Shown piece after piece: positions 30,179 through 64,000 of a stretch of DNA of 64,000 nt. The notes beneath the pieces were generated by a model. It was not told the DNA's origin and did no database searches. It worked only from the letters and a program-made list of their open reading frames with translations. Location: IMG/VR virus record IMGVR_UViG_3300032334_001259, positions 62,001 through 126,000 of that record. The stretch is one strand, 5' to 3'. The first letter of the stretch is position 1, and every line of letters begins with the position of its first letter. Both the position numbers and the translations under genes were made by a program.

Positions 30179-31408
30179 ATGGCTGATGTAAAGATACTGC
30201 ACGGTGACTGCCGTGAACAACTCAAAACTCTACCCGACAATAGCATTGATAGCATTGTGACTGATCCACCTTATGGTTTAAGTGTTGAACCAGATATGAC
30301 AGAAGTTCTTCGTCACTGGTTAAATGGTGATGACTATGAACATACTGGCAAGGGTTTTATGGGTAAAAGTTGGGACAGTTTTGTTCCAGGACCAAGTGTA
30401 TGGCGTGAATGTTTGCGTGTTCTTAAACCAGGCGGTCATATGTTATCATTCTTTGGTTCAAGAACTTATGATTTAGGTGTCACAGCAATTAGATTGGCTG
30501 GTTTTGAAATACGTGACCAGATTATGTGGGTTTATGGAACAGGATTTCCAAAGAATCATGATATAAGCAAGGCAATTGACAATGCTGCTGGTGCTGAAAG
30601 AACTGTTGGTGGTAGAGTATGGAGCGGCGGCGCACGTAGTGGTGGTATTATTAAAGATGATGCCAGTGAAACTACCTCAGAACGAATCATTTATGATGAA
30701 CCAGCAACCCCAGAAGCAAAAAAGTGGCAAGGTTGGGGGACAGCACTTAAACCATCACATGAACCAATTTGTGTTGCACGTAAGCCAATAAGTGAAAAAA
30801 CTATTGCAGATAATGTATTGCAATGGGGTGTCGGTGCATTGAATATTGATGCATCACGAGTTGGAGAAGGTGCAAAAAAGTGGGTTACACCACGAGGTGG
30901 TATTTGGACAACAGATAGTGAAGCAAAAGCGGAACTTGTTGATAATCCATTAGGTCGTTGGCCAGCAAACTTTATCCATGATGGTAGCATAGAAACAGAA
31001 TGGGAAAAGTTTTTTTATTGTGCGAAGGCAAATAATACAGACCGCAATGATGGTTTAGATGATTTTGAAGGTGGCAAGACCAATGATGGTCGTAAAAAGG
31101 ATGCGGATAATGCATATCAACGTGGTGCATCAATACGTAAAAACACACATCCTACTGTAAAACCTACTGATTTAATGCGTTATTTGTGCAAAATGATCAC
31201 TCCAACTGGTGGAACAGTCCTAGACCCATTTACTGGCAGTGGTTCTACTGGTCGTGGTGCTGTGTTAGAAGGTTTTAATTTTATTGGTATTGAAATGAGT
31301 GAAGAATATGTTGAAATTGCTAAAGCACGAATTGCTGTGGTAGAAAAAAAGGTAGCACAAGTTGAAGATAAAATTACTACATACAATAATCTATTTGAGG
31401 AAGAATAA
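30179..31408 (+). CDS. DNA amino-methyltransferase (N6-A/N4-C, beta class)
   Basis: TDPPY catalytic motif; HPTVKP..LMRYL; VLDPFTGSGSTG SAM-binding motif near the C-terminus. Confidence 0.92.
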   Translation: MADVKILHGDCREQLKTLPDNSIDSIVTDPPYGLSVEPDMTEVLRHWLNGDDYEHTGKGFMGKSWDSFVPGPSVWRECLRVLKPGGHMLSFFGSRTYDLGVTAIRLAGFEIRDQIMWVYGTGFPKNHDISKAIDNAAGAERTVGGRVWSGGARSGGIIKDDASETTSERIIYDEPATPEAKKWQGWGTALKPSHEPICVARKPISEKTIADNVLQWGVGALNIDASRVGEGAKKWVTPRGGIWTTDSEAKAELVDNPLGRWPANFIHDGSIETEWEKFFYCAKANNTDRNDGLDDFEGGKTNDGRKKDADNAYQRGASIRKNTHPTVKPTDLMRYLCKMITPTGGTVLDPFTGSGSTGRGAVLEGFNFIGIEMSEEYVEIAKARIAVVEKKVAQVEDKITTYNNLFEEE

Positions 31409-32493
31409 TGGGCGTCCAAATATTACAAGGTGATTGCCGTGATGTTTTGAAAACATTGGCAGATGAAAGTGTAAACATGTGTGTAACATCACCACCTTAT
31501 TATGGATTGCGTGATTACAAAACTGCTACATGGAGTGGTGGTGATTCTAATTGTGATCATGTTGAAAAGATTGCCGCACATGGCGGTGAACGTGCTGACC
31601 GTGACCAAGGTGGTAATGTATTCAAGTTTCGTGGAACTTGTGAAAAGTGTGGCGCAACCTCAAGTGATAACCAGATTGGTCTTGAACAAACACCAGAAGA
31701 ATATATTCAACAATTAGTAGAAGTATTCCGTGAAGTTCGTCGTGTTCTTAAAGATGATGGCACACTTTGGGTAAACATTGGTGATAGTTATTACAATTAT
31801 CGCAGTGGAACTGCATTTGTTAAGCAAAGTGTAGCAAAAACTGACCAAGATTTGCCAAGTTTCAGCCCAAGTCGTAATAATAAATTAGATGGTCTTAAAA
31901 GCAAAGACCTTATTGGTATTCCATGGATGTTAGCATTTGCTCTACGTGCCGATGGTTGGTATTTGCGTCAAGACATTATTTGGCACAAACCAAACCCAAT
32001 GCCAGAAAGTGTGAAAGACCGTTGCACAAAGGCACATGAATATATCTTTTTGTTAAGCAAAAGCAAGAATTATTACTTTGACCATGAAGCAATTAAAGAA
32101 GAAGGTGTAATACCTGCTGGTACAAAAGCGGCAAAAGGCAGTGCGGAACGTCAAGCAGAGTTTGGTGTAAATGGTCGTCCACCAGAATATAAAATCTATG
32201 ATGGTATGCGACAAAAGCGTAGTGTTTGGACTGTCACAACAAAACCTTATAAAGGTGCACATTTTGCCACATTTCCAACAGATTTGATTGAACCTTGTAT
32301 TTTAGCAGGTTGCCCAAAAGATGGTATGGTATTAGACCCATTTGGCGGCAGTGGCACAACTGGATTGGTAAGCAATCGTCTTGGACGTAATGCTACTTTA
32401 ATTGAACTTAATCCAGAATATATTGATTTGGCAGAAGATCGCATTGATCCACCTGAACAACGTTTAGACAGTAATCTGTTTACATTTGAATGA
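31408..32493 (+). CDS. DNA methyltransferase, likely N4-cytosine (beta class)
   Basis: TSPPY motif; WYLRQDIIWHKPNPMPESV.DR; HFATFP; LDPFGGSGTT. Confidence 0.92.
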   Translation: MGVQILQGDCRDVLKTLADESVNMCVTSPPYYGLRDYKTATWSGGDSNCDHVEKIAAHGGERADRDQGGNVFKFRGTCEKCGATSSDNQIGLEQTPEEYIQQLVEVFREVRRVLKDDGTLWVNIGDSYYNYRSGTAFVKQSVAKTDQDLPSFSPSRNNKLDGLKSKDLIGIPWMLAFALRADGWYLRQDIIWHKPNPMPESVKDRCTKAHEYIFLLSKSKNYYFDHEAIKEEGVIPAGTKAAKGSAERQAEFGVNGRPPEYKIYDGMRQKRSVWTVTTKPYKGAHFATFPTDLIEPCILAGCPKDGMVLDPFGGSGTTGLVSNRLGRNATLIELNPEYIDLAEDRIDPPEQRLDSNLFTFE

Positions 32494-32907: not shown

Positions 32908-33831
32908 ATGCTTACTAGGTTTATTGCTGTTGCAGCCGCAACACTTATTAGTACTGCTGCTTTTGCAGTAGAAGTTACAGGTGCAGGTGCTACTTTCCCA
33001 CAACCAATTTATATGAAGTGGGCAGAAGGTTATAAGAAGGCCACTGGTAATGTCATTAATTATCAAGGTATTGGTAGTGGTGCAGGTATCAAGCAAATTG
33101 AAGCAAAGACAGTAAATTTTGGTGCTACAGATATTCCAGTAAAGCCAGAAGACCTTGAAAAGAAAGGTCAAGTTCAATTCCCAATGATCGTTGGTGGTAT
33201 TGTTCCAATTATTAATCTTAAGGATGTTGACCATCTAACATTAACAACAGACATTCTTGCAAAAATTTATAGTGAAAAGATTCGTCGTTGGAATGACAAG
33301 GAAATTGCAGACCTTAATTCAGGTGTAAAACTTCCAGACCTTCCAATTATCAAGATTCGTCGTGCTGATGGTAGTGGCACAACTTGGAATTTTACAAAGT
33401 TTCTTACAGAAGCCAATGAAGATTGGAAGAAGAAGTATGGAACTGGTCAAACTGTTGAATGGGTTGGCGGTGCAATCGGAGCAAAGGGTAATGACGGTGT
33501 TGCAAACAACGTTTACCAGACAAATGGTTCCATTGGTTATGTAGAATATGCTTTTGCCAAGCAAAATGATCTTACTGTTGCTGATATGATTGGCAAGGAT
33601 GGTAAGAAGGTTTCACCTGGTCTTAAGGCTTTCCAAACAACTTGGCCAATGGTTGCTACAAGTTACATTGTTCTAAACAAAGAAAATGATAACAAAGAAG
33701 CAGTTCAAGCGGCAATTAAGTTCTTTGAATATGGTTATGCAAATGACAAGGACGCAGAAGCACTTGACTATATTCCATTGACTGCAGCACAAAAGGCAGA
33801 AAGCAAAAAGGCTTGGTCAGTAGTCAAGTAA
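32908..33831 (+). CDS. pstS: Phosphate ABC transporter substrate-binding protein
   Basis: Signal peptide; GAGATFP, NYQGIGSGAG, FGATD, RRADGSGTT, GSIGYVE. Confidence 0.95.
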   Translation: MLTRFIAVAAATLISTAAFAVEVTGAGATFPQPIYMKWAEGYKKATGNVINYQGIGSGAGIKQIEAKTVNFGATDIPVKPEDLEKKGQVQFPMIVGGIVPIINLKDVDHLTLTTDILAKIYSEKIRRWNDKEIADLNSGVKLPDLPIIKIRRADGSGTTWNFTKFLTEANEDWKKKYGTGQTVEWVGGAIGAKGNDGVANNVYQTNGSIGYVEYAFAKQNDLTVADMIGKDGKKVSPGLKAFQTTWPMVATSYIVLNKENDNKEAVQAAIKFFEYGYANDKDAEALDYIPLTAAQKAESKKAWSVVK

Positions 33832-40042: not shown

Positions 40043-40471
40043 ATGCCAAGTAAAATAAAAAGTTTTTGTAAAAATTGTGGTGTCAGTTTTATACACGGAA
40101 AAAGTTCATATGGAATATATTGTAGTAATAGGTGTCAGGGGGAACTAAAATCTAAAACAATTATAGAAAATTGGTTTAATGGAACAGATAAAGGATATAA
40201 AGTAGGATTTAGAATTAAACCTGCTATAAGAAATTATCTGTTAGAAAAAACTAATTATAGTTGCTCCGAATGTGGGTGGAATAAAATAAACCCAAAAACT
40301 GGAAAATCTCCATTAGAAATTGATCACATTGACGGAGATTGTTCAAATAATAAAGAAGAAAATTTAAGAGTTCTTTGTCCTAATTGCCATTCTTTAACGC
40401 CAACATGGAAAGCATTAAACAAAGGAAATGGAAATAAAGAAAGTCATAGATATTCTGGTCTTATAAAATAA
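40043..40471 (+). mobile_element. Free-standing HNH homing endonuclease gene
   Basis: Zn-ribbon CxxC...YCSNRC; CSECG; LEIDHIDG..SNN.EENLRVLCPNCH. Confidence 0.88.
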
Positions 40472-41480: not shown

Positions 41481-42107
41481 TTAAAACGCTAATGGATAAA
41501 AATACCAAATACCATCAGCAAGTAGGGCAAGTCCAACTAAACCTACAGCAATACTACCGCCCCATAACAGTATGTTAGCACCAAGTATAGCAGTAGTGCT
41601 TAATACAATTGCAATTTGAAATGCCGTACTTGCCAATCCAAATAGTGGATTACGTTGTTTAGCAGCATCACGTTCTGCTTCAAGTTCTCGTGCTTCTGCC
41701 ATAATTTCTTTTTTTCCATGACCTTTTGGATCACTTTCAAGTTTATCAATAACGGCTTGATAACGTGATGCACGTTCTGCTAATATCTTTTTAACATTTG
41801 CTGGTGTAGATGGGTCTTCTAGTTGTGCTTTAGTATCTTCTAAATCTACATAATATAAGTTTTGTTTAATGCTTTTTGCTTGATAAAAAGCCCATGCATT
41901 TGTTACTTCTATATTTGTTTCCATAATTCTTGTAGCATTTTTACCACCAAAAAGTGTGCATACCGATAATATCATTGCAAATACGGTAATGGTAATTGTA
42001 GAAAGTTTTCTTATCTTTGCTTCTTTATCAGCAAGTTTATCTATATCACCTTCTTTACGAGTTTTAAGATATGTGTTTACAGTGTTTTGAAATTGTTTGA
42101 TGTCCAT
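41481..42107 (-). CDS. DUF4337-like membrane protein
   Basis: TM helix, NAWAFYQAKSIKQ, coiled coil, two C-terminal TM helices; start moved to MDIKQF because the longer ORF overlaps tRNA-Leu. Confidence 0.7.
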   Translation of the reverse strand: MDIKQFQNTVNTYLKTRKEGDIDKLADKEAKIRKLSTITITVFAMILSVCTLFGGKNATRIMETNIEVTNAWAFYQAKSIKQNLYYVDLEDTKAQLEDPSTPANVKKILAERASRYQAVIDKLESDPKGHGKKEIMAEARELEAERDAAKQRNPLFGLASTAFQIAIVLSTTAILGANILLWGGSIAVGLVGLALLADGIWYFYPLAF

Positions 42108-42156
42108 GGTATTTTTCTCTTGACTATATGTGATATTTAGGATATATATAATACAT

Positions 42157-42234
42157 GCCCTACTAGCCCAACTGGTTAGAGGTGCTTGCCTTAGAAGCAA
42201 GAGGTTCTCCGTTCGAATCGGAGGTGGGGCACCA
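42157..42234 (+). tRNA. trnL: tRNA-Leu(TAG) without a long variable arm
   Basis: gccctac/gtggggc acceptor; cttgc-ct-tag-aa-gcaag; 5-nt variable loop; A73; CCA. Confidence 0.85.
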
Positions 42235-42672: not shown

Positions 42673-42962
42673 AACAACCAACAATAGATAATATAATAAT
42701 AGACCAAACAATAAGTTTGGCACCAAATAAAATACTAATAAAAATATTTCCTAATTTAATTGGAACAGTATTTTTTCCACCACTATCCACAGATTTTCTA
42801 AAAGAAACTATACAAGAACCGCTAAAAAAATGGTGTAATGAACATTTAAGTCCTAGTTACAATATTGTTTATAGATATAATGATGGTGATCCGTATTGGT
42901 CACTTTTTTTAGACGATACAAGTGATGTGAATATTTTTATGCTACGTTTTGGTAAAAATTAA
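42669..42962 (+). CDS. Small protein of the F-x-L/M-R-W/F-G family
   Basis: 97 aa ending SDVNIFMLRFGKN. Confidence 0.6.
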   Translation: MKQPTIDNIIIDQTISLAPNKILIKIFPNLIGTVFFPPLSTDFLKETIQEPLKKWCNEHLSPSYNIVYRYNDGDPYWSLFLDDTSDVNIFMLRFGKN

Positions 42963-43321
42963 AGTCCCATTTCTTTGCGAATCTTTGTCGCACTTATAGC
43001 ATGTATTTCTTCATCAAATACTTCTTGTTCAATTTTATAACCAACATCACGACCATATGTTATGTTTACGATGTTAGGAACAAGTTCTACCACAAAATCT
43101 GTGTGGTGTACATAACCTTTTTCATGTAAACTTTGTATAATACGATTTTTTACATCAACAAAGTTAAATGGATTATTGTCTGTTCCACCAACATCACGTA
43201 TCATAATACATACTTGACCTGTTTTAGAATGTGCCCTTTTAAATAAAGCAAAGTGCCCATCATGCCATGGTTGCCAACGTCCTAACATTTGCACAGTTGG
43301 TGCTTGATTATTCCAAGTCAT
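42959..43321 (-). CDS. HxGH nucleotidyltransferase (cytidylyltransferase/NadM/ATP-sulfurylase superfamily)
   Basis: LGRWQPWHDGH, NP F..V..RI, ISATKIR; ATGA overlap with the upstream kinase. Confidence 0.82.
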   Translation of the reverse strand: MTWNNQAPTVQMLGRWQPWHDGHFALFKRAHSKTGQVCIMIRDVGGTDNNPFNFVDVKNRIIQSLHEKGYVHHTDFVVELVPNIVNITYGRDVGYKIEQEVFDEEIHAISATKIRKEMGL

Positions 43322-43791
43322 GATGATTTTAATCCTTTTAACATTGCTTTGATCCAAGTTGGATGTGTATCAAAATCAAGTTCTTCCGTGATATATTTTG
43401 ACCAAAAATCTGCATCTTGTGTATCTACACGGAAATAATAACTGCCTGGTTCTGGTGGAACAAACATCTTATTTGTATCCTCAAACCTACCTTCTTTAAT
43501 TGTATCAACCCAAATAACAGTAGCAGGCCCAAAGGCCGCACGAGTGGCAGCTGTGGGACATACAAAATCTGCAATTGCCCATGAACCTGCTTCTGTAACT
43601 TGATCACATAGCCAACCCATTCTACGGGCTTGCTCTATGCGATCACTTTCACTAAAACCAAGATGGCTATTAATATTTGCACGAACAGCATCTGCGTTCC
43701 AATGAACTGCTTTAAGTTTAGGAGCCAAGGCTTTTGCCAGAGTGGTTTTACCCGACCCTGGCAAGCCCATTATTAATATTTTCTTGTTCAT
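43318..43791 (-). CDS. cysC: Adenylylsulfate (APS) kinase-like protein
   Basis: GLPGSGKTT, NADAVR, LGFSESDRIEQARR, FVCPT..TR match CysC motifs. Confidence 0.8.
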   Translation of the reverse strand: MNKKILIMGLPGSGKTTLAKALAPKLKAVHWNADAVRANINSHLGFSESDRIEQARRMGWLCDQVTEAGSWAIADFVCPTAATRAAFGPATVIWVDTIKEGRFEDTNKMFVPPEPGSYYFRVDTQDADFWSKYITEELDFDTHPTWIKAMLKGLKSS

Positions 43792-45245
43792 GCAGATGTT
43801 GTTACAAGTTTTTTACGAGTTACATTACTAACAACATAGCAAAGTGCACCACTACCGAATACTTCAATTAATACAGCAAGTGCCATTATGCTTGGACCAC
43901 CGCCGAAAAACTGACCATAGATGTAAAGTGGAATACCAATGAATACTCCTACTGCACTACCAGCAAGGAATCCTTGACGAGTAAGGAAGTCGCCAGCCAT
44001 AAGTGCAAGAATAATTGGAATAGCAAAAGTAAGCATTAATGCCTTGCCCCACATAAACAATACGTTAAGATCAAGACCTGGCATATTAGCTAAACCAACA
44101 CCAATAGCAGCTACTACAACCATTGCAATGCGTCCCCAATAAATTGGATCTTTTCCGTTGAATCCATCGTGAACATCATTACCAATAAGGTTTGCAGCAC
44201 TTACCATTTGTGTATCAATAATGCTTACAAGACCAGCAAATACAACGGCAAGATAAAGAAGTGGCAACCAAGTGCCAACTACATTTGCCATAACCATAAG
44301 GTTAATAAACTGTGTTTGTGGACCACTTACATCATAGTGCAAACCTGCACCAAGCATACCTAACATACCACCAACAACTGGTAGAATCGTCCAATAAAAT
44401 GGTGCCATAATAAATGCCTTACGAACATCTTTTTGTTCAATGCTAAAAGCATTTTGATAAGCTGCATTATCAGTCCATGGTGTTGCAAGATGACCCAAAA
44501 CTGTAGGTAAACCAAAACCAAGGAAAAGTCCAGTAGTAAATGCATCACCCCAAAGTGCGATACCATTACCTGTCTTACCACCAATACCTGCGGCTACTGG
44601 TTCAAATCCAGTTGTACCAAATACAGCGATAGCAACAGTTAATAATACTGCCCAAATTACACCAATTTTAACGATATCAGTTGCAACAGTAGCCTTTTGT
44701 CCACCACGCAAACTGTAGACAAGCGCAATTACAACAAGCAGAATGCTCACTGTAAAAGCATTAAGACCTGTTAACAATTCAACGCTTCTGCTACCAGCAA
44801 AAAGATTGATTGTCATACCTTGCAACATGTATAGAGTTGCAGCCGCAAATACACAATATTGAACAGCACGACCGTATTTGCTTCGGAACCATTGGCTTAA
44901 TGTAAAACCATTAGGATTATCTTGTCTAATTTTATTAGCACCGTAACTAAAAAGTATAAGTGCAAAAAAATTACCAAGACTAAACCAAAATACGCCAGCA
45001 ATACCGTTGTTAAAGCCTTGCTGTGCGGCAACAAACAAACCTGGTGCCCAAATCCACGCAGCACCACTACTCAAACTTCCTTGCCAAAAACCTAACTTAC
45101 GATTAGCAACAAGAAAAGATTCTTTGGTCTTATTGAAGCCTTTGGCAAACCAACTTGTAAGCCAAAAAACAAACAATGCATATAGACCAATTACCAATAG
45201 TCCAGTTTCTTGACTGAAAATTGGAAAAATTTTAGTTACATCCAT
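43788..45245 (-). CDS. Na+/solute symporter (SSS; PutP/Dur3-like)
   Basis: About 13 TM helices; SFLVANR, S..AAWIWA..L, YS..GG.KA...TD, AGLVS.ID. Confidence 0.88.
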   Translation of the reverse strand: MDVTKIFPIFSQETGLLVIGLYALFVFWLTSWFAKGFNKTKESFLVANRKLGFWQGSLSSGAAWIWAPGLFVAAQQGFNNGIAGVFWFSLGNFFALILFSYGANKIRQDNPNGFTLSQWFRSKYGRAVQYCVFAAATLYMLQGMTINLFAGSRSVELLTGLNAFTVSILLVVIALVYSLRGGQKATVATDIVKIGVIWAVLLTVAIAVFGTTGFEPVAAGIGGKTGNGIALWGDAFTTGLFLGFGLPTVLGHLATPWTDNAAYQNAFSIEQKDVRKAFIMAPFYWTILPVVGGMLGMLGAGLHYDVSGPQTQFINLMVMANVVGTWLPLLYLAVVFAGLVSIIDTQMVSAANLIGNDVHDGFNGKDPIYWGRIAMVVVAAIGVGLANMPGLDLNVLFMWGKALMLTFAIPIILALMAGDFLTRQGFLAGSAVGVFIGIPLYIYGQFFGGGPSIMALAVLIEVFGSGALCYVVSNVTRKKLVTTSA

Positions 45246-45257
45246 TTTATTTTCCTT

Positions 45258-46334
45258 TTAATTGAAATAATCTATTAATTCGCCATCTCTGTTAAGGTCA
45301 CATGTTATACAATGTATACCTCCACTCCAGAAATAACGATTTCTGTAATGAGAGACGTGAACATTTATACCATGTTTTTCTAACTCATCACAAATTCTTT
45401 TATTGTAATTGAATACAATTACATTATTCTCATCAATGCTTAACATATTACAGTCAAATACGTTATCCATCATGTATTTCTGCCAACCATTATCTAACCA
45501 TTCATTAGCAAGAGCAGCACGAGCAGCATCTCCTTCTTCACCATAGTTCCATAGGTTATGATTATGTTTTTGTTTGAATCCTAAGAACTTATACATGCTT
45601 ACCAAACTGTCACTGCCATCTGTAGTAATAACCTTCCAGTTTGGAAAATCTTTTGCATATTTTTCACTTCCCATAACACTAACGATAAGACCTGGTTTAA
45701 GTGGACGATACCAACTGTCACGCCAACCTATTTCATCGTATATAATATTCTCATAACCTTCACCAAATTCAGAAACAAATTGTTGAAATTCATTATGTGA
45801 TCCATATCTTTGAAATGGTCCACCATTTCCATATGTCATACGTTTGCCAATTTTGGTCATCCAACCTTCACTGTTTATTTGTGTTTTAGTATGATAAACA
45901 GAATTTCCTTGCGCTTTAACATATTCAACAATATTTTGATATTGAGCATATTGTTCTGGTTCAATAAACCAGTGGATGAATTTATCACCCATCATCATGA
46001 TCCAGTCACGAGGCTGCAGTGGGGGTGGCACTATACACTCGGCTGTGGGATATTCTGTGTATTGTAATGGTAATACAAATTGATCATACCATACTCGTGA
46101 CTGGATTCTCTTTTTGAAATCTGCGTTAGTATCAACCGTGGGACGTATGGTTTTTACACCAAATGATTGTAGCAGTCTTTCTAAATTTTGATAGTCTTCT
46201 TCTGTTTCATATGCTATTTGTTCATAACGACGGCGGACATCAATATCTTTTATAAAACTATAAAATTCTGGTGCATAGGTGCGACCAATTACACAATTTT
46301 TTAATGGTTGAAATAAGCAATGCTTTTCGAACAC
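45258..46334 (-). CDS. Amidinotransferase-family (pentein) protein
   Basis: QPRD, KPGLI, N.LSIDE..V and C-terminal GGIHC.TCD with the nucleophile Cys; the usual H-x-D reads W-R-D. Confidence 0.8.
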   Translation of the reverse strand: MFEKHCLFQPLKNCVIGRTYAPEFYSFIKDIDVRRRYEQIAYETEEDYQNLERLLQSFGVKTIRPTVDTNADFKKRIQSRVWYDQFVLPLQYTEYPTAECIVPPPLQPRDWIMMMGDKFIHWFIEPEQYAQYQNIVEYVKAQGNSVYHTKTQINSEGWMTKIGKRMTYGNGGPFQRYGSHNEFQQFVSEFGEGYENIIYDEIGWRDSWYRPLKPGLIVSVMGSEKYAKDFPNWKVITTDGSDSLVSMYKFLGFKQKHNHNLWNYGEEGDAARAALANEWLDNGWQKYMMDNVFDCNMLSIDENNVIVFNYNKRICDELEKHGINVHVSHYRNRYFWSGGIHCITCDLNRDGELIDYFN

Positions 46335-46345
46335 CTTTTATATCC

Positions 46346-47029
46346 TTAAAATATTTCTTTTTTTTGAACTGCTACTGTATACCCAGACCTACGTATAATA
46401 TCATCTACTTGTGGATTTTCAGCAGATTTTATATATTTTTCATTTGAATCTTCGGCTAAAATTTCTTCTAATCTAGAGTCTTGATATGCTATGGGAAACT
46501 GCAACCATTTTCCAATATCTCGTAGATATATTTTTTTATAAAGATACACAAGTTCAGTGCTTACATAAAAAGGAGTAACATCTAGCCATCTAATATACTG
46601 TGTCATGCATCCCCATGTTGGTCCACCACGAATTCTACTTTGTTGCTTTGTTAATATTGTTTTATCACGTCCTATAATAACAGGTTGAACTTCAATATCT
46701 AAACTTTGTAATTTTGTAATAAATTTAGTAAATGGAGGTATTTGTAATTCATCTTTATTCCAAAATGGAACACTAGCACTTATCACAGCGTAATTCTTAC
46801 CACCCATGATATCTAATGTTATGCTATCAATATCATTCCAATATTTGTTGTTAGGTTCTTTATAATGGGGAACAAAATAATTATCAGGATCACTTGTATC
46901 TAATAATTCTTCCCATCCATGAACATCTGGGTGTAGTGCAAAGATTTTACTAAACAGATGATTTCCACTGCCCTGTGGACCAAAAAGTAAAATAATTTTA
47001 TTTTTTTCTTTATTTTTAAAAAAATCCAT
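46346..47029 (-). CDS. Sulfotransferase-like P-loop protein
   Basis: ILLFGPQGSGNHLFSKIF..HP.V, resembling the 5'-PSB loop G-x-x-R-S-G-T; conserved IIGRD. Confidence 0.55.
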   Translation of the reverse strand: MDFFKNKEKNKIILLFGPQGSGNHLFSKIFALHPDVHGWEELLDTSDPDNYFVPHYKEPNNKYWNDIDSITLDIMGGKNYAVISASVPFWNKDELQIPPFTKFITKLQSLDIEVQPVIIGRDKTILTKQQSRIRGGPTWGCMTQYIRWLDVTPFYVSTELVYLYKKIYLRDIGKWLQFPIAYQDSRLEEILAEDSNEKYIKSAENPQVDDIIRRSGYTVAVQKKEIF

Positions 47030-47044
47030 ACATATTTCCTAAAT

Positions 47045-47057
47045 CATAAATATTTAG
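47045..47057. promoter_or_regulatory. Overlapping divergent late promoters
   Basis: cataaatatttag gives CATAAATA on the plus strand and CTAAATA on the minus strand. Confidence 0.6.
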
Positions 47058-47110
47058 TAAAAAAAAATCTAGTATCTTAAAAATATTTATTAAAATTAGG
47101 AAAAAAATAA

Positions 47111-47851
47111 ATGAACAAGAAAATTTATGAGTTTTTATTAAAAAATTTAAATGAAGCATTTAAATTAGAAAGATACACAGAAATTCGCAATAGTATTGAT
47201 GAAAATACTATTATAACCGATCTTCCTTGGACATTAAAACGTTGGGAAAAATTTAAAAAAGATATCAATGATACTTTTCAAGACGTTGATATAGAATTTA
47301 AAGGGACACTAAAAGAATTTACTGAACACGTTGATTACAAATACCAGTGCCGTGTATGGGGTGGTGAAATGTGGAAACCTCGCACTGAGATTTATCGTTT
47401 TACTGGTTGGAATATCGTCAAGGATGTAAACGATCTTAAACCAAATGCAGTATTAGATGTTGGGTGTGGGTTTAATCAATTTAAAGCACATATACCTGGC
47501 TTGATTGGTATTGACCGTTACAATCCAAATGCCGATTATATGGTTGAAATTATGGATTTTAAATGGAAGCCAGAAAGTTTTGATGCAATTATTGTTTTTG
47601 GAAGTATAAATTTTTACAGCTATGATTGGGTTGCGGAAAGATTCTCTAGAGTATTTGAATTACTTGCACCTGGTGGAACAGTATTTTGTCGTGCAAATCC
47701 ATGGAATACAGAACCAGAAAATAAATGGATTGATCCGTATTACTGGGATTTTGACACCGCCGTTCGTATTGCAGAAGCAAATAATGTTAAATTAGAAACA
47801 TGGAAACAAGATAACGGTGACCGTTTCTATTTTGTTTATAAAAAGCATTAA
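47111..47851 (+). CDS. Class I SAM-dependent methyltransferase with an N-terminal ACP-like extension
   Basis: VLDVGCG motif I, SFDAII, LLAPGG; the N-terminal ~80 aa has an acyl-carrier-like pattern. Confidence 0.8.
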   Translation: MNKKIYEFLLKNLNEAFKLERYTEIRNSIDENTIITDLPWTLKRWEKFKKDINDTFQDVDIEFKGTLKEFTEHVDYKYQCRVWGGEMWKPRTEIYRFTGWNIVKDVNDLKPNAVLDVGCGFNQFKAHIPGLIGIDRYNPNADYMVEIMDFKWKPESFDAIIVFGSINFYSYDWVAERFSRVFELLAPGGTVFCRANPWNTEPENKWIDPYYWDFDTAVRIAEANNVKLETWKQDNGDRFYFVYKKH

Positions 47852-60625: not shown

Positions 60626-63600
60626 TTATAAAGGCATGTAAATTTGTTGGACTTTAGCATAACTTGACACGCCTGCGTTTGCATAAAGTCTTGCGGTTGT
60701 TCCACTTACGTTAGCGTAGAAGTTACCAATACTAGTTCCATTTGCGCTTACTACACCATAGGTTTGAACACTTGCGTTGCTACTGCCACACACAAGAACT
60801 ACTTCAGCAAGTGTAAAGTTATTGTTTGTATAATCACTCAATGTAACAACATATTTTGCACCACGATACGTGCTTGTTGAAAAACTATCAATTATGGTTG
60901 GAACACCCGCACTTAAACTTGTATTTGCGCTTAATGTGCTGATACCACCACCAAAGAAATTACCACTACTATTTGCAAGATGTGCAACACTGTTAACTGC
61001 TGTTGTATATACACCACCAGTGTTTGCAACAACTGTATTACCGCCAGTAGCATCAGTTATGCTTGTAACAGTTCCTGTTGTAGTAAGAGCACGTGCGTCA
61101 ATTATATCAGTGCTTAATGGTGCTTCTGTAAATGTAAGAGTCGTGCCACTTACACTATAGGCAGTAGTTGGAAGCTGTATAACACCATTAATTGAAACCA
61201 AAGTGCCTGCGGTAGTAGTGCTTTGACTTAATGTAAAGTTAGTTTGACTGCCATCACCAACAAACTGATCTGCTGTAATAATAGTAAACGCAGTCCCAGT
61301 TCCACTCCAAGTTGTTCCAGTATAAAATTCCAATTGACTGCTGTTGGTATTAAAACGTATCATACCTTGTTGTGCATTACTTGGACGATTTGCCTGTGCA
61401 CCAGTTGGAATAATCATAGAATCTGTGCCATTAATTTGCAGAGATGTGTTACCAACTATTTGGCTTGGTGCTACTTTAATTCCAACTTGTCCAGTTGCAC
61501 CATTAGTTGTAAGTAGATTTTGATAACCAGCTGCACTATTACCGTGAACAACAAGGTTTGCAACAATTTGATTTGCATTAACTGTAACATTTGTGTTTAA
61601 TTGTGGGTATAGATTAATATTGCCAGCATTTGCGTATGGGTAAATGTTGCTTGTATAAATTGTTGGAACATTCTTTGATGTAGTTCCATTTATATTACCA
61701 CCAACATTTAGATCACCAGAAATACCAGCGCCGCCACGAACTTGCAGTGCACCTGTGTTAGTAGTTGTACTTGCAGTTGTGCTACTAATAACAAAACTAT
61801 TTGTATTTGCTCTCATACGAGCAAACTCATTTGCATTAGCCACACCACCAAGTGAGTAAATGATATCGTTAGCAGTAGTTGTAGAAATTACAAGGTTACC
61901 ACCACCAGTTGTTGTATTACCAGCAACATATAGATAACCGTCATTTGCTTTTGTTAAACTAAAAGCAGCTTGACTATAACCGCTGCCGTTGATACCCATA
62001 TCAATAAAAGTGTCAACATCTGTTCCATTATCAGCAGTAACAACAATATCACCACTTGCTTGTGCGCCAGTATTGCTATTTTCTAGGTTTATTTGTGTAT
62101 AGTTATTAGTATTACCGCTAAATTGAGCCACTACGTTAGCAAGTGGAGTATAACCAGTTTGACCAGCATAAAGTGCATTCATACCAGTTACTGGTAAACC
62201 GTAGAAAATACCACCTTGTGTATAAACATTTGCGGTTATAGCATTGATATTACCAGTAACAATTAAGTTACCAGCAATATATGCATTACCATTACCACCA
62301 CTTGTTGTTGTTAAAAGACTAGTAAATACAGCACTATTTGGAACGTTAGCACCTATTGCACCATTTAAGTAACCAATAACTTGGCCCGCACTGTTTAAGT
62401 TTCCAACAGAAGCATTGCCTGTTACTGTTAAACTATTCAATGTGCCAATTGAAGTAATGTTTGGTTGACTAGAACTAACACTAGCGATAGTTCCTTCAAG
62501 AATTGTATTTGTATTACCAATCTGTCCAGCACTTACTGCATTTACACTTATGTTACCAGTGAGAGTCATACTTGCACCACTAATCGTAGCGCCAGCATTA
62601 CCAATAGTTCCTGCATTTAAAGTAGGAGCAGCAACAGTTCCCTGTGATGTAATAGTGCTACTTGTTGTAAGAGTAGTAAATGCACCAGTAGATGCAGTTC
62701 CATTACCAATTGGAGTATTTTGGATTGCAGCAGCATAGATGTTACCACCAACACCCATACCACCATAAATTACAGCAGCACCAGTTGTTGTTGATGTTGA
62801 TGTGTTGCCACTATAAGCAATGATATTACCAAGTTTTACAGTATCATATATTAGATACGCATTTGCAAGATCAACAGTTGTGCTTGGTTCTGATCGAAGA
62901 TTACTGAATACATACCATGCATTGTCTATGTGATTTCTTACAATACCAGTATGGTTATACCCAACAGCAGCATCGTATTTGTGGCTGTAGAAACCTATTT
63001 CATAGTTATAATTGGTAAAACCCGATACCGCAAGGTATAATAGCGGAGCATTGGCAACAAGCGAAGTACTTCCAAGACTTGTAAGATTAGCAACAGTTAA
63101 GTTACCCGCAATATAAGAGTCACCGCCAGCGTAGAAACCGCCAGTTATTTGTAATGCACCTTGACCACTGCCATAGCTGTTTGCTGTTCCTGTTAGTGTT
63201 GCAGTCGAGGCAGTAATTGCCGCACCAGTATTACCAATAGTGCCAGCATAAACTGCTACACCATTAAATGTGTTAGCATTTACGGCACCGCTGACAGTTA
63301 GAGATGATAAAGTACCAAGACTTGTAATATTCGGTTGACTTGGTGTAGCACTACCAATAGTGCCTTCAAGTATAGTAGTTGTGTTACCGATTTGACCAGC
63401 ACTAACAGCGTTTACACTTACGTTACCAGTAAGAGTCATACTAGCACCGCCGAATGTAGCACCACTATTACCGATTGAACCAGCATTTAATGTTGCAGCG
63501 TTAAGTGTACCATTAACGGTTGCAGTTGTGAATACACCAGTATTAGGTGTGTTGGCACCAATTGCACCAGTTATATAACCAATGTGTTGACCGCCACCAG

Positions 63601-64000
63601 TAGAAGTAAAATTATCTGCTTTTAAATCATTATTAACGGTAGTTGTACCAGTATCAGCACCAATGCTAACTGTTGTTGCTGCTCCACCAATGTTTACAGT
63701 TGTAGTGTTTGCATTAAAGACAGATGCAGTGCCAGTAGAACTTGTATCAATTGTTGGATTTGCGCCATTCATCAATACTTGTGTAGTATTTGGTAAGTTT
63801 AAGGTTGCATTTTTAATAGTTACTAGACCAGATGTGGCACCAATATTAATATTAGTAGCAGCACCAGCAAAATTCATTGTTGTTGCAACATTATCATATA
63901 AACTTTGTGTAGTTTGACTACCAATAAGGAAAGGATTAGCAATATTTGCTGTTCCACTTGTAGCACCCATTTTAAGTGCAGTAGCAGCACCAGCAAAATT
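60626..64000 (-). CDS. Large fibre/structural protein, 5' end beyond the window
   Basis: Frame stays open to the right edge; G/N/T/A-rich repeats; C-terminal IDSFS.STYRGAKYVV domain. Confidence 0.8.
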   Translation of the reverse strand, partial: NFAGAATALKMGATSGTANIANPFLIGSQTTQSLYDNVATTMNFAGAATNINIGATSGLVTIKNATLNLPNTTQVLMNGANPTIDTSSTGTASVFNANTTTVNIGGAATTVSIGADTGTTTVNNDLKADNFTSTGGGQHIGYITGAIGANTPNTGVFTTATVNGTLNAATLNAGSIGNSGATFGGASMTLTGNVSVNAVSAGQIGNTTTILEGTIGSATPSQPNITSLGTLSSLTVSGAVNANTFNGVAVYAGTIGNTGAAITASTATLTGTANSYGSGQGALQITGGFYAGGDSYIAGNLTVANLTSLGSTSLVANAPLLYLAVSGFTNYNYEIGFYSHKYDAAVGYNHTGIVRNHIDNAWYVFSNLRSEPSTTVDLANAYLIYDTVKLGNIIAYSGNTSTSTTTGAAVIYGGMGVGGNIYAAAIQNTPIGNGTASTGAFTTLTTSSTITSQGTVAAPTLNAGTIGNAGATISGASMTLTGNISVNAVSAGQIGNTNTILEGTIASVSSSQPNITSIGTLNSLTVTGNASVGNLNSAGQVIGYLNGAIGANVPNSAVFTSLLTTTSGGNGNAYIAGNLIVTGNINAITANVYTQGGIFYGLPVTGMNALYAGQTGYTPLANVVAQFSGNTNNYTQINLENSNTGAQASGDIVVTADNGTDVDTFIDMGINGSGYSQAAFSLTKANDGYLYVAGNTTTGGGNLVISTTTANDIIYSLGGVANANEFARMRANTNSFVISSTTASTTTNTGALQVRGGAGISGDLNVGGNINGTTSKNVPTIYTSNIYPYANAGNINLYPQLNTNVTVNANQIVANLVVHGNSAAGYQNLLTTNGATGQVGIKVAPSQIVGNTSLQINGTDSMIIPTGAQANRPSNAQQGMIRFNTNSSQLEFYTGTTWSGTGTAFTIITADQFVGDGSQTNFTLSQSTTTAGTLVSINGVIQLPTTAYSVSGTTLTFTEAPLSTDIIDARALTTTGTVTSITDATGGNTVVANTGGVYTTAVNSVAHLANSSGNFFGGGISTLSANTSLSAGVPTIIDSFSTSTYRGAKYVVTLSDYTNNNFTLAEVVLVCGSSNASVQTYGVVSANGTSIGNFYANVSGTTARLYANAGVSSYAKVQQIYMPL

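What the first reader, a model, noticed from the sequence alone, without database searches (positions are those of the whole stretch)
42959..47851. Late-expressed 'activate-import-modify' cluster: HxGH nucleotidyltransferase, APS kinase, SSS transporter, amidinotransferase-like, sulfotransferase-like and methyltransferase
Seen: five co-oriented, tightly coupled genes (two ATGA overlaps) plus a divergent MTase, sharing overlapping late promoters. Established: an HxGH nucleotidyltransferase of the ATP-sulfurylase superfamily plus CysC makes PAPS, the donor for sulfotransferases; amidinotransferases plus SAM methyltransferases build guanidino/creatine-type groups; SSS proteins import small solutes. 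Inference: a phage-encoded pathway that imports a precursor and installs sulfated or amidinated/methylated groups on a late target such as virion glycan, fibre or host surface, or makes a small metabolite. A second sulfotransferase-like gene (40543) and a GT29/MptE-like gene (50786) lie nearby. I know of no characterised phage system with this combination.
Basis: partly seen in the sequence, partly recalled or inferred. Interest (0 to 1): 0.8.

Follow-up and report, generated by a model that had tools for sequence, protein, structure and literature searches.

The report
Phage tail-island sulfation-type tailoring cassette
A giant freshwater phage carries, among its tail genes, a tightly packed operon for a membrane importer, a PAPS-making kinase with an unusual partner enzyme, and sulfotransferase-, methyltransferase- and amidinotransferase-like proteins; it is most likely a kit for chemically decorating some late target, but the target and the imported compound are unknown.

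Summary
The gene layout is real: five co-oriented minus-strand genes with two ATGA overlaps, and a divergent methyltransferase gene across an 81-bp spacer. The cassette recurs in about 24 related freshwater phage contigs, beside neck and tail-fibre genes, but it is modular.

- **Fixed core:** methyltransferase, SSS permease and a 227-aa sulfotransferase-fold protein (p227). Their order is kept down to 37% permease identity, and one protein fuses p227 to the methyltransferase.
- **Kinase:** a convincing APS kinase. Relatives 55-69% identical are translationally coupled to genuine sulfotransferases in 10 other viral contigs, and one sits near a sulfotransferase in Ralstonia phage phiRSL1.
- **HxGH enzyme:** it derives from NadM-type NMN adenylyltransferases, not from ATP sulfurylase. 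It is fused to this kinase in more than 50 contigs. A role in making APS is an attractive inference, not a result.
- **Amidinotransferase-like protein:** it has the fold and the catalytic Cys, but lacks the catalytic His and Asp. It is present in only some cassettes, so the creatine-type logic is not supported.
- **Nearby genes:** calling 40543 sulfotransferase-like has no statistical support. Calling 50786 GT29-like rests on one weak hit.

Best reading: a late sulfation-plus-methylation tailoring cassette in a host-recognition-type variable island. Its acceptor and the permease substrate are unknown. Interest is moderate to high.

The parts
42959..43321 (-). Minimal (120 aa) HxGH nucleotidyltransferase. 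It has GRWQPWHDGH near the N-terminus, an invariant YGRDVGY, and ISATKIR at the C-terminus. It is a NadM/archaeal-NMNAT-derived scaffold lacking the middle part of NMNAT. Proposed, not shown, to make the kinase's adenylylated substrate (APS).
   Evidence: Pfam CTP_transf_like 22.1 bits (cut-off 21), NCBIfam NMNAT models E 1e-6 but far below cut-offs. The family profile A6 matches PDB NadM 2qjt at E 5e-9 and MJ0541 at 6e-8; no ATP sulfurylase appears at E<=10. MJ0541 residues 72-109 have almost no counterpart. It is fused to the kinase in 52 of the 80 best kinase loci. ATGA overlap with the kinase stop.
43318..43791 (-). APS-kinase-family P-loop kinase (157 aa). Most likely a true adenylyl-sulfate 3'-kinase that makes PAPS.
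   Evidence: Pfam APS_kinase E 6.5e-15, 55.9 bits. PDB APS kinases reach 2.7e-8. Family-invariant GLPGSGKTTL, D34, R37, F46, R51 and FVCP. Homologues 55-69% identical are stand-alone and overlap the stop codon of Sulfotransfer_3/1 genes in 10 viral contigs. phiRSL1 ORF238 lies about 4.7 kb upstream of a Sulfotransfer_2 gene in one co-oriented cluster. In the tree, the window clade falls on the same side of the deepest well-supported split as the sulfotransferase-coupled clade.
43788..45245 (-). Sodium:solute symporter family permease (485 aa) of a phage-specific clade. Substrate unknown.
   Evidence: Pfam SSF 1.4e-13, TIGR00813 9e-29, phrog_20720 4e-64. The closest solved structures are DUR3 urea symporters, E 6e-16, over the N-terminal 190 residues only. 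77 viral loci carry relatives. It is always flanked by methyltransferase and p227 homologues in the aquatic groups.
45258..46334 (-). Amidinotransferase-fold (guanidino-group-modifying superfamily) protein, 358 aa. It keeps the nucleophile Cys (GGIHCITCD) and both guanidino-binding Asp, but has Trp for the catalytic His and Asn for the triad Asp. It is an accessory module of the cassette.
   Evidence: Profile A1 matches PDB HsvA, AGAT, SxtG and StrB1 at E 2e-18 to 7e-13. The AF2 model has pLDDT 82, and Foldseek returns the same enzymes at E about 1e-17. Active-site columns were read. Present in only 9 of 24 cassette loci.
46346..47029 (-). p227: a sulfotransferase-fold protein with a degenerate 5'-phosphosulfate-binding loop (GPQGSGNH). 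It is the first gene of the operon and part of the fixed triad with the permease and methyltransferase.
   Evidence: No Pfam, NCBIfam or PHROG hit. Atlas feature neighbours include Sulfotransfer_1/3 clusters at 0.93-0.95. The AF2 model has pLDDT 91.5; the best PDB folds are TPST1 (E 2.5e-4, TM 0.45), SULTs and the olefin-synthase sulfotransferase domain, with P-loop kinases lower. hhalign against a real phage sulfotransferase aligns only the P-loop (E 0.002, probability 14%), with Gly where that protein's Arg sits. P0139 fuses a p227 domain to the same methyltransferase family.
47030..47110 (.). 81-bp AT-rich divergent spacer with crossing promoter-like boxes: CATAAATAT at 47045-47053 (+, towards the methyltransferase) and ATAAATAT at 47090-47083 (-, towards the operon).
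   Evidence: Sequence read, positions. Both boxes are conserved in L007 and L008, and the TAAATA core in all five spacers aligned. No enrichment of the motif in the window, and no sigma-70 excess.
47111..47851 (+). Class I SAM-dependent methyltransferase (246 aa, motif I VLDVGCG) of a virus-specific family. Divergently transcribed; part of the fixed triad.
   Evidence: Pfam Methyltransf_25 scores only 19.7 bits, below the cut-off. Atlas neighbours score 0.98-0.99 to viral AdoMet-MTase clusters. Homologues flank the permease in all aquatic groups, and the family is fused to p227 in P0139 (HMM E 2.7e-38). The PDB profile search was uninformative.

Best explanation
The locus is a modular tailoring cassette in the variable, tail-fibre-bearing part of the structural region of a freshwater T4-like jumbo phage. 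This position is analogous to the 'host recognition cluster' described for aquatic T4-like myophages.

- **Core.** The evolutionarily fixed core is methyltransferase + SSS permease + p227 (sulfotransferase fold).
- **Added in this lineage.** The core has been joined to a PAPS-supply pair. The kinase is a true APS kinase. The translationally coupled 120-aa NMNAT-derived nucleotidyltransferase most likely makes its substrate, adenylylating sulfate or a similar small oxyanion.
- **Added in this genome.** An optional amidinotransferase-fold protein stands where relatives carry an Asp/Asn-hydroxylase-like Fe/2OG dioxygenase.
- **Proposed mechanism.** The permease brings in a solute: either the acceptor or a precursor of it, or sulfate. 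The NTase and kinase make PAPS. p227 transfers the sulfuryl group, and the methyltransferase methylates the same acceptor. In relatives a second sulfotransferase-like protein (p210) also takes part. The whole unit is transcribed from divergent T4-late-like promoters.
- **Shown.** Gene anatomy; family or fold of each protein; modular co-occurrence; coupling of the kinase to sulfotransferases in other phages.
- **Inferred.** APS formation by the NTase; sulfotransferase activity of p227; the permease substrate; the acceptor (tail-fibre or virion protein residue, versus a small molecule); late timing.
For: - **Operon coupling:**
- **Kinase family:** Pfam APS_kinase E 6.5e-15, with APS-kinase-specific residues invariant.
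- **Kinase coupling elsewhere:** stand-alone kinases overlap the stop codon of Sulfotransfer_3/1 genes (E 7e-18 and 2e-11) in 10 contigs. phiRSL1 ORF238 lies in one co-oriented cluster with a Sulfotransfer_2 gene, E 4e-21.
- **Kinase tree:** the sulfotransferase-coupled clade shares one half of the tree with the window clade and two NTase-fused clades, while NTase-fused kinases occupy both halves (unrooted).
- **NTase partnership:** the NTase is fused to the kinase in 52 of 80 loci. Metazoan PAPS synthases are also kinase-then-adenylyltransferase fusions (established knowledge).
- **NTase shape:** it lacks the region corresponding to MJ0541 residues 72-109 and has invariant Arg42 and Arg91. 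This fits a smaller anionic substrate.
- **p227 fold:** sulfotransferase-like.
- **p210 in relatives:** a weak Sulfotransfer_3 hit, and it directly follows the NTase.
- **Fixed triad:** methyltransferase, permease and p227 stay in fixed order in all four loci of the distant group examined, at 37-41% permease identity. P0139 is a p227-methyltransferase fusion.
- **Hydroxylase link:** bacterial fusions of Asp/Asn hydroxylase with Sulfotransfer_3 domains exist.
- **Location:** beside the gp15-like and virion proteins and the tail fibres, as in the published variable island (PMC7029224).
Against: - The NTase's only detectable relatives are NMN adenylyltransferases. There is no similarity to ATP sulfurylase.
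- 53 of 55 kinase+NTase loci outside the cassette show no recognisable sulfotransferase within 8 kb.
- p227 has no significant sequence match to any sulfotransferase family. It carries Gln/Gly where the essential Lys/Arg of the 5'-PSB loop sits. Its Foldseek TM-scores are only 0.37-0.49, and P-loop kinases appear in the same list.
- The permease travels with p227 and the methyltransferase rather than with the kinase. Two cassette lineages (L013, L029) lack the kinase and NTase nearby.
- No SSS member is known to me to carry sulfate (own knowledge).
- No expression or chemical data exist. No RNA run was listed.
Confidence: 0.45

Rival explanations
1. Cofactor salvage, NadR/PnuC-like. The permease imports a nucleoside-type vitamin precursor such as nicotinamide riboside. 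The kinase phosphorylates it and the NMNAT-like NTase adenylylates it, rebuilding NAD+ or a related dinucleotide, for example against NAD-depleting defences. p227, the methyltransferase and the amidinotransferase-fold protein would be unrelated neighbours.
For: The NTase family's closest relatives are NadM-type NMNATs. The gene order permease-kinase-NTase with ATGA coupling mirrors an import-phosphorylate-adenylylate logic. The kinase-NTase fusion is widespread without sulfotransferases. In Xylella phage Bacata it sits next to a COG3236 gene, a domain I recall as NADAR-type (own knowledge).
Against: The kinase is specifically APS-kinase-like, not NadR-RNK-like: Pfam AAA_28 reaches only 3.4e-5 against APS_kinase at 6.5e-15. 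Its close homologues are coupled to real sulfotransferases. The NTase lacks the middle segment present in NMNATs. The permease's constant partners are p227 and the methyltransferase.
Confidence: 0.15
2. One reading: an imported precursor is amidinated by the amidinotransferase, N-methylated (creatine-like) and sulfated, giving a guanidino metabolite or guanidinated surface group.
For: The amidinotransferase fold, the nucleophile Cys and both guanidino-binding Asp are present. The gene directly precedes the permease gene in all genomes that have it. Cyanobacterial toxin clusters combine an amidinotransferase, a sulfotransferase and an APS kinase (own knowledge).
Against: The catalytic His is replaced by Trp or Phe in this clade, and the triad Asp by Asn in the whole phage family. 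The gene is absent from most cassettes, which otherwise keep all other parts. The methyltransferase is linked to p227 and the permease even where no amidinotransferase-fold gene exists.
Confidence: 0.1
3. DNA hypermodification. The cassette decorates phage DNA bases or their sugars, with the permease importing the attached group.
For: In phiRSL1 the kinase lies among three TET-associated glycosyltransferases, which I know as DNA-base glycosyltransferases (own knowledge), and a sulfotransferase. In gut phages the homologous permease is followed by two PAPS_reduct + ParB-like pairs. I recall this gene-pair type being predicted to modify DNA (own knowledge). The window also has two DNA methyltransferases at 30179-32493.
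Against: The cassette has no base-modifying transferase, hydroxymethylase, TET/JBP or glycosyltransferase. The methyltransferase lacks DNA-methyltransferase family hits. The cassette sits in the tail region with late-type promoter boxes, and its distant relatives sit among genes with peptide- and protein-modifying domains: SPASM radical SAM, SET, Asp/Asn hydroxylase.
Confidence: 0.1
4. A PAPS-like but non-sulfate donor. The NTase adenylylates a different small phospho- or oxy-anion, the kinase adds the 3'-phosphate, and p227 transfers that group. This would be analogous to the Campylobacter O-methyl phosphoramidate pathway, in which an APS-kinase homologue phosphorylates CDP-amidate and methyltransferases finish the group (recalled from memory, not tested here).
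For: p227's donor loop is non-canonical. A methyltransferase is obligatorily linked to p227. The NTase is not a sulfurylase homologue.
Against: Close kinase homologues pair with canonical sulfotransferases. No glutamine-kinase or amidohydrolase-type genes are present in the cassette.
Confidence: 0.08
5. No common pathway: a hypervariable island that accumulates unrelated mobile accessory genes.
For: Island content varies between close relatives. Such islands are known to hold unrelated cassettes (PMC7029224).
Against: There are translational coupling, fixed gene order over deep divergence, a p227-methyltransferase fusion and kinase-NTase fusions.
Confidence: 0.1

Closest known systems
Cellular PAPS supply plus decorating enzymes, e.g. 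rhizobial NodPQ (ATP sulfurylase/APS kinase) + NodH (sulfotransferase) + NodS (N-methyltransferase), or Xanthomonas RaxPQ + RaxST (own knowledge)
   Same: A dedicated APS-kinase-type enzyme is encoded next to sulfotransferase-like and SAM methyltransferase genes, to decorate one acceptor.
   Different: The adenylyltransferase is not a CysDN or Sat homologue. The sulfotransferase-like protein is far from any Pfam family. A permease belongs to the unit. The carrier is a lytic-type jumbo phage and the acceptor is unknown.
Metazoan bifunctional PAPS synthase (APS kinase N-terminal, ATP sulfurylase C-terminal; PDB 1x6v listed)
   Same: The order is kinase then adenylyltransferase, fused in 52 viral contigs and ATGA-coupled here. 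The kinase domain is homologous.
   Different: The second domain is a 120-aa NMNAT-derived Rossmann module with no match to the sulfurylase family. Its activity is unproven.
NadM/archaeal NMN adenylyltransferase (PDB 2qjt, 1f9a) and NadR
   Same: The GRxQPxHxGH and SxTxxR motifs and the overall N- and C-terminal alignment. NadR also combines an NMNAT with a P-loop kinase.
   Different: The phage protein lacks about 35 central residues and the C-terminal helical extension. The partner kinase is APS-kinase-like. NCBIfam scores are far below the family cut-offs.
Amidinotransferases HsvA, AGAT, SxtG, StrB1 (PDB 5wpi, 1jdw, 6u1r, 1bwd)
   Same: Same fold over the full length, the nucleophile Cys in GGxHC, and two guanidino-binding Asp.
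   Different: Catalytic His replaced by Trp, triad Asp by Asn. A 22-residue low-confidence insertion lies at residues 77-98. About 15% identity.
Host recognition cluster (variable island in the structural region) of pelagi- and cyanomyophages (PMC7029224)
   Same: A large non-syntenic island between neck and virion genes and the tail fibres. It holds tail fibres plus seemingly unrelated enzyme cassettes (radical SAM, LPS-type, transport). Asp/Asn beta-hydroxylase is common in these phages. The distant relatives of this cassette sit in just such islands.
   Different: That paper does not describe this methyltransferase-permease-p227 unit, the kinase-NTase pair or any sulfation function. The present phage is a roughly 338-kb jumbo phage whose gp15-like protein is nearest those of PA5oct and Atu_ph07.
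Ralstonia phage phiRSL1 ORF232-ORF238 cluster
   Same: Homologous APS-kinase-like protein (51% identity) encoded with a sulfotransferase in a jumbo phage.
   Different: phiRSL1 has no NTase domain, permease, p227 or this methyltransferase. Its partners are TET-associated glycosyltransferases and sugar-activation enzymes.

Membership tests
APS kinase (CysC; PF01583 / TIGR00455) | Significant match to the family model | tested here: met
   Pfam 55.9 bits against gathering cut-off 21.1. NCBIfam TIGR00455 scores 54.2 bits, below its equivalog cut-off of 138.7. It is therefore a family member, not a certified equivalog.
APS kinase (CysC; PF01583 / TIGR00455) | P-loop plus the APS-binding motifs (DGD-N-x-R, LGFSxxDR, F-I/V-S-P) | tested here: met
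   GLPGSGKTTL, NADAVR (DGDAVR in Bacata gp31), LGFSESDR and FVCP. D34, R37, F46, R51 and FVCP are invariant in the phage family. The motif identities themselves come from my own knowledge.
APS kinase (CysC; PF01583 / TIGR00455) | C-terminal lid region of canonical enzymes | tested here: not met
   Only residues 4-86 align to Pfam profile positions 4-91 of 152. The rest is shorter and unaligned.
APS kinase (CysC; PF01583 / TIGR00455) | Works with a sulfotransferase (functional context) | tested here: met
   Homologues are translationally coupled to Sulfotransfer_3/1 genes in 10 contigs, and one lies in a cluster with a Sulfotransfer_2 gene in phiRSL1. Enzymatic activity cannot be tested with these tools.
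ATP sulfurylase (Sat type) | Sequence or profile similarity to the family | tested here: not met
   No Pfam or NCBIfam sulfurylase hit. No sulfurylase chain appears among 55 PDB matches at E<=10 with the family profile.
NMN adenylyltransferase, NadM/archaeal type | GRxQPxHxGH and SxTxxR motifs | tested here: met
   GRWQPWHDGH and ISATKIR. The profile matches 2qjt at 5e-9 and 1f9a at 6e-8.
NMN adenylyltransferase, NadM/archaeal type | Full-length match, including the central region between the two motifs | tested here: not met
   HMMER aligns MJ0541 residues 4-71 and 110-133 only. The phage family has about 13 positions where MJ0541 has about 38. NCBIfam scores 27.8 bits against a cut-off of 127.
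Sodium:solute symporter family (PF00474) | Full-length match to the family model | tested here: met
   Residues 44-433 align to profile positions 1-406 of 406, 51 bits against 22.8.
DUR3 urea/polyamine symporter subfamily | Full-length similarity to DUR3 | tested here: inconclusive
   Best PDB hits are DUR3, but only over residues 19-211 (E 6e-16). Source names vary between urea-proton symporter and PutP.
Amidinotransferase (guanidino-group-modifying superfamily) | Fold | tested here: met
   Foldseek gives HsvA, SxtG, AGAT and StrB1 at E 3e-17 to 1e-15 and TM 0.58-0.64. The profile search gives E 2e-18.
Amidinotransferase (guanidino-group-modifying superfamily) | Cys-His-Asp catalytic triad | tested here: not met
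   Cys342 is present. The His column (GGHSDGTY in the sugar-linked clade) reads GWRDSWY here. The column aligned to the first Asp of the amidinotransferases' FDAAD motif is an invariant Asn144. Equating these columns with AGAT His303 and Asp254 rests on my own knowledge.
PAPS-dependent sulfotransferase | Fold | tested here: met
   AF2 pLDDT 91.5. The top PDB folds are TPST1/2, SULTs and the olefin-synthase sulfotransferase domain (E 2.5e-4 to 2e-3), but TM is only 0.37-0.49.
PAPS-dependent sulfotransferase | Match to a sulfotransferase family model | tested here: not met
   No Pfam, NCBIfam, PHROG or PDB-sequence hit. hhalign against a real phage sulfotransferase gives probability 14%.
PAPS-dependent sulfotransferase | Lys/Arg of the 5'-phosphosulfate-binding loop (PKSGTT / PRSGST) | tested here: not met
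   The loop reads GPQGSGNH. In the hhalign register Gly20 faces the Arg. Gln19 is nearly invariant in the family.
Class I SAM methyltransferase | Motif I and family match | tested here: inconclusive
   VLDVGCG is present and invariant. Pfam scores 19.7 bits, below the cut-off of 27. Atlas neighbours are AdoMet-MTase clusters at 0.98-0.99.
T4-type late promoter | TATAAATA box upstream of late genes | tested here: inconclusive
   The exact box is absent from the spacer and not enriched (3 found against 9.9 expected). The variant (C)ATAAATAT is conserved in relatives and precedes several structural genes. A gp55-type sigma factor was not looked for and was not among the window proteins scanned.
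Host-recognition-type variable island of T4-like aquatic myophages | Lies within the structural region next to tail fibres, with content varying between relatives | tested here: met
   The flanks are the gp15-like protein, a virion protein and tail fibres. Module gain and loss among 24 loci is shown. The definition comes from PMC7029224.

The most novel reading that the evidence does not exclude
The 120-aa NMNAT-derived nucleotidyltransferase is a new, non-homologous kind of ATP sulfurylase. Fused or coupled to an APS kinase, it would form a minimal viral PAPS synthase. With the phage-specific SSS permease acting as a sulfate importer, the cassette would give the phage a self-contained import-activate-transfer sulfation system, used late in infection to sulfate and methylate its own tail-fibre or host-recognition proteins, in hosts that cannot supply PAPS.
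Probability: 0.2. Interest if true: 0.85.

Novelty: new variant of a known kind. Interest (0 to 1): 0.62.

Why it matters
Sulfation by phages has no characterised example that I could find in six literature searches. Here three independent gene linkages tie a widespread viral APS-kinase family (more than 473 IMG/VR hits) to sulfotransferases. That points to a neglected viral chemistry.

- The kinase-NTase fusion is a concrete, easily testable candidate for a new route to APS/PAPS, or for a new PAP-linked donor.
- The methyltransferase-permease-p227 unit is one of the very few cases of a secondary transporter conserved as part of a phage enzyme cassette.
- It sits in the island that is thought to determine host recognition in abundant aquatic myophages.
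- If the acceptor is a tail fibre, this would be a chemical layer of host-range variation.

Tried and rejected
- **DNA similarity:** megablast of the locus against isolated phages found nothing. tblastn of p227 found nothing, and tblastn of the methyltransferase gave one partial hit in an unannotated marine viral record. No cultured carrier of the full cassette is therefore known.
- **T4 late promoter:** the exact TATAAATA box is not enriched, and the sigma-70 and terminator scans were at background.
- **Kinase/NTase boundary:** I considered a frameshifted single gene because phrog_10255 covers both proteins. I rejected this: a clean ATGA junction with its own ATG is conserved in relatives.
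- **phiRSL1 ORF238 as a kinase-NTase fusion:** rejected, because its C-terminal half has no HxGH motif.
- **Gene 40543 as a second sulfotransferase:** no hit in Pfam, NCBIfam, PHROGs or my family HMMs.
- **Permease substrate from cellular homologues:** a groundwater MAG and a Bdellovibrio MAG have uninformative neighbours (SecDF, a short-chain dehydrogenase, a cupin protein). The rest are Oscillospiraceae prophage-like loci.
- **Profile comparisons:** p227 and p210 against a real phage sulfotransferase aligned only short motifs. The methyltransferase profile against the PDB was uninformative.
- **Transcription:** no RNA run was listed.
- **Literature:** searches for phage sulfotransferase, amidinotransferase or symporter systems found nothing relevant.

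Full report
**Observation**

On the minus strand the order is p227 (46346-47029), an amidinotransferase-fold gene (45258-46334, GTG start), an SSS permease (43788-45245), a kinase (43318-43791) and an HxGH nucleotidyltransferase.

- The NTase's real start is the ATG at 43321, not the TTG at 43357.
- The permease/kinase and kinase/NTase junctions are ATGA overlaps.
- The other two junctions are 11-12 nt gaps with AAGGA ribosome-binding sites.
- The methyltransferase gene (47111-47851, + strand) diverges across an 81-bp AT-rich spacer.

**Genomic setting**

The window is part of a 338-kb IMG/VR contig. The phage is T4-like. The gene at 48993-50381 matches the gp15 tail-sheath stabiliser, and its nearest relatives are in the jumbo phages PA5oct and Atu_ph07. 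Around the cassette lie the tail tube, sheath and adaptor genes, a virion protein and several tail-fibre genes. The sequence was found only in freshwater DNA metagenomes. No RNA run was listed.

**Promoters**

The spacer has CATAAATAT on the + strand (47045) and ATAAATAT on the - strand (47090), crossing each other. The same motif lies just upstream of the genes starting at 40043, 47894 and 51493. Both boxes are conserved in the two closest relatives compared, L007 and L008, whose methyltransferases are 70% and 89% identical. A TAAATA core is invariant in all five spacers aligned. The canonical TATAAATA is not enriched in the window: 3 found against 9.9 expected. 'Late' is therefore a reasonable inference from T4 biology, not a result.

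**Kinase**

- Pfam APS_kinase scores E 6.5e-15, and PDB APS kinases reach 2.7e-8.
- An alignment with phage homologues keeps the P-loop, D34, R37, F46, R51 and FVCP invariant. From my own knowledge these correspond to the DGD-NxR, LGFSxxDR and FISP elements of APS kinases. Bacata gp31 even has DGD. Only the N-terminal 86 residues align, and the lid is shortened.
- The decisive evidence is genetic. A scan of IMG/VR found more than 473 relatives.
- In 10 of the best 80 loci, a stand-alone kinase 55-69% identical to the window's overlaps the stop codon of a gene that is a bona fide sulfotransferase (Sulfotransfer_3 E 7e-18, Sulfotransfer_1 E 2e-11).
- In the cultured jumbo phage phiRSL1, the homologue ORF238 lies in a cluster with a Sulfotransfer_2 protein (E 4e-21) and three TET-associated glycosyltransferases.
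- In a kinase tree, the window clade, the sulfotransferase-coupled clade and two NTase-fused clades share one well-supported half, while NTase-fused kinases occur on both sides of the deepest split (unrooted). A common activity is therefore the simplest assumption.

**Nucleotidyltransferase**

It is 120 aa long, with GRWQPWHDGH, an invariant YGRDVGY, and a C-terminal ISATKIR.

- The family profile matches NadM-type and archaeal NMN adenylyltransferases (2qjt E 5e-9, 1f9a E 6e-8). Weaker matches are NadR, PPAT and pantothenate synthetase. No ATP sulfurylase appears even at E<=10.
- HMMER aligns MJ0541 residues 4-71 and 110-133. The central 38 or so residues of the NMNAT are therefore largely missing.
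- The NTase is fused C-terminally to the kinase in 52 of 80 loci and is a separate adjacent gene in 4. phrog_10255 is this fusion.
- That the enzyme feeds the APS kinase with APS is an inference from three things: the fusion, the analogy to kinase-sulfurylase fusions in animals, and the loss of the nucleotide-substrate region.
- Against the inference, nearly all fusion loci lack a recognisable sulfotransferase within 8 kb.

**Permease**

It is a full-length SSS family member, in phrog_20720. Its closest solved structures are DUR3 urea symporters, over the N-terminal 190 residues only. Relatives in 77 viral loci fall into groups:

- freshwater jumbo-phage relatives at 54-78% identity;
- a 37-41% group in other T4-like aquatic phages (this group comes);
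- a roughly 30% group in gut phages and Oscillospiraceae prophage-like loci, where the permease is followed by two PAPS_reduct + ParB-like pairs.

Cellular homologues gave no operon clue. The substrate remains open.

**p227 and the methyltransferase**

- p227 has no family hit.
- Its language-model neighbours include viral and bacterial Sulfotransfer_1/3 clusters.
- A confident AF2 model (pLDDT 91.5) finds tyrosylprotein sulfotransferases, cytosolic SULTs and the olefin-synthase sulfotransferase domain as best PDB folds. E-values are 2.5e-4 to 2e-3 and TM-scores 0.37-0.49, and P-loop kinases appear in the same list.
- Its donor loop reads GPQGSGNH. Aligned to a real phage sulfotransferase's GLPRSGST, a Gly faces the Arg. 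A defining residue is therefore missing.
- The methyltransferase is a class I SAM enzyme of a virus-only family.
- The two are functionally tied. P0139 is a natural p227-methyltransferase fusion.
- In all four loci of the distant group examined, the order methyltransferase-permease-p227 is fixed, followed in two by an Fe/2OG dioxygenase.

**Amidinotransferase-fold protein**

- A profile of 27 homologues matches HsvA, AGAT, SxtG and StrB1 over the full length (E 2e-18 to 7e-13).
- The AF2 model (pLDDT 82) gives the same enzymes by Foldseek (E about 1e-17).
- The nucleophile Cys (GGIHCITCD) and the PRD and xRD aspartates are kept.
- The catalytic His column (GGHSDGTY in a clade that sits next to sugar-nucleotide genes) is Trp or Phe in the permease-linked clade. 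The triad Asp column is an invariant Asn.
- The gene is optional.

**Modularity**

A synteny table of 24 group-1 loci shows the following.

- The cassette always lies beside the 364-aa virion protein and gp15.
- Common parts are the methyltransferase, p227, a roughly 240-aa dioxygenase, the permease, the kinase, the NTase and a 210-aa protein, p210.
- The dioxygenase has an HxD...H-x10-R signature, and its nearest recognisable neighbours are Asp/Asn beta-hydroxylases.
- p210 has a weak Sulfotransfer_3 hit.
- The amidinotransferase-fold gene is present in 9 of the 24 loci.
- The window genome has no homologue of the dioxygenase or p210. Among loci that span the whole cassette, it alone lacks both.
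- Bacteria have Asp/Asn-hydroxylase-Sulfotransfer_3 fusion proteins.
- The distant relatives sit in islands rich in radical SAM/SPASM, Asp/Asn hydroxylase, TauD and SET-domain genes.
- Such islands match the 'host recognition cluster' described for pelagi- and cyanomyophages. That is a large variable island inside the structural region which holds tail fibres plus enzyme cassettes (PMC7029224).

**Interpretation**

The best-supported reading is a late tailoring cassette whose chemistry centres on sulfation and methylation.

- PAPS comes from the phage's own APS kinase, for which the support is strong.
- The NMNAT-derived enzyme supplies the kinase's substrate. This is plausible but unproven.
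- p227 is the transferase. The fold supports this, but the sequence motif is against a canonical mechanism.
- The methyltransferase acts on the same acceptor. The fusion supports this.
- The permease imports either the acceptor or a precursor of it, which its tight link to p227 and the methyltransferase favours. Alternatively it imports sulfate, which would make the system self-contained.
- The amidinotransferase-fold protein is an accessory, possibly non-catalytic or mechanistically altered.
- The location, and the peptide- and protein-type enzymes in related islands, lean towards a protein acceptor such as a fibre. Nothing here shows it.

**Novelty**

APS-kinase and sulfotransferase annotations exist in the public records of phiRSL1 and Xylella phage Bacata. 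I found no description of a phage sulfation system, of the kinase-NTase fusion, or of the methyltransferase-permease-p227 unit. I file the locus as a new variant of known kinds: PAPS-dependent decoration, and variable-island cassettes.

Noticed in passing
L016 (Ralstonia phage phiRSL1, NC_010811.2 165109-177498): ORF238 (APS-kinase-like) is followed by three TET-associated glycosyltransferases (PF20691), an APH-type kinase annotated as an NDP-sugar pyrophosphorylase-like protein, an NTP_transferase and a Sulfotransfer_2 protein. This may be a sulfated glycosyl modification, conceivably of DNA bases, in a cultured jumbo phage.
   Followed up: partly
L014 7912-11820 and about 50 similar loci (L042-L093, L179-L202): Gut phage contigs and Oscillospiraceae prophage-like loci carry a homologous SSS permease (about 30% identity). 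It is directly followed by two pairs of PAPS_reduct-domain and ParB-like proteins. This is a conserved permease-plus-putative-modification module of unknown function.
   Followed up: partly
L009 9051-11715; L011 4715-5722 and 9408-10972: Amidinotransferase-fold paralogues that keep the catalytic His lie next to DegT-like, epimerase/dehydratase and UDP-glucose dehydrogenase genes in two other jumbo-phage contigs. This suggests a guanidino- or amidino-sugar pathway.
   Followed up: no
L204 1-6646; L205 1-2189 and 11304-11585; L203 221-1284: Distant relatives of the cassette sit in islands packed with radical SAM/SPASM enzymes, Asp/Asn beta-hydroxylases, a TauD dioxygenase and a SET-domain protein. 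This is a peptide- or protein-modification flavour.
   Followed up: partly
L149 9466-11013 (and 6 other kinase loci): A tryptophan-halogenase family gene (PF04820, E 6.5e-100) lies near the kinase-NTase fusion in seven viral contigs.
   Followed up: no
window 30179-32493: Two adjacent DNA methyltransferase genes (phrog_67, E 1e-72 and 4e-83).
   Followed up: no
window 32908-33831: A PstS-like phosphate-transporter subunit gene (phrog_5385, E 9e-54). This is a typical aquatic-phage auxiliary gene.
   Followed up: no
window 24512-29455 and 60626-63970: Very large ORFs (1647 and 1114 aa) without any PHROG match at E<=1e-5. Over-represented 9-mers such as TGGTGCTGG and GCACCAGCA suggest repetitive coding sequence, but I did not locate them.
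   Followed up: no
window 41481-42200: The 239-aa ORF is 52% identical to L007:15788-16411, which is a DUF4337 protein (E 6.5e-37). It is conserved just outside the cassette in relatives.
   Followed up: no
L176/L177 (MAG nzgw467 contig JAHFMX010000003.1): The same roughly 11-kb segment, carrying an SSS homologue, SecDF and an SDR gene, occurs twice on one contig. This is either a tandem duplication or an assembly artefact.
   Followed up: no
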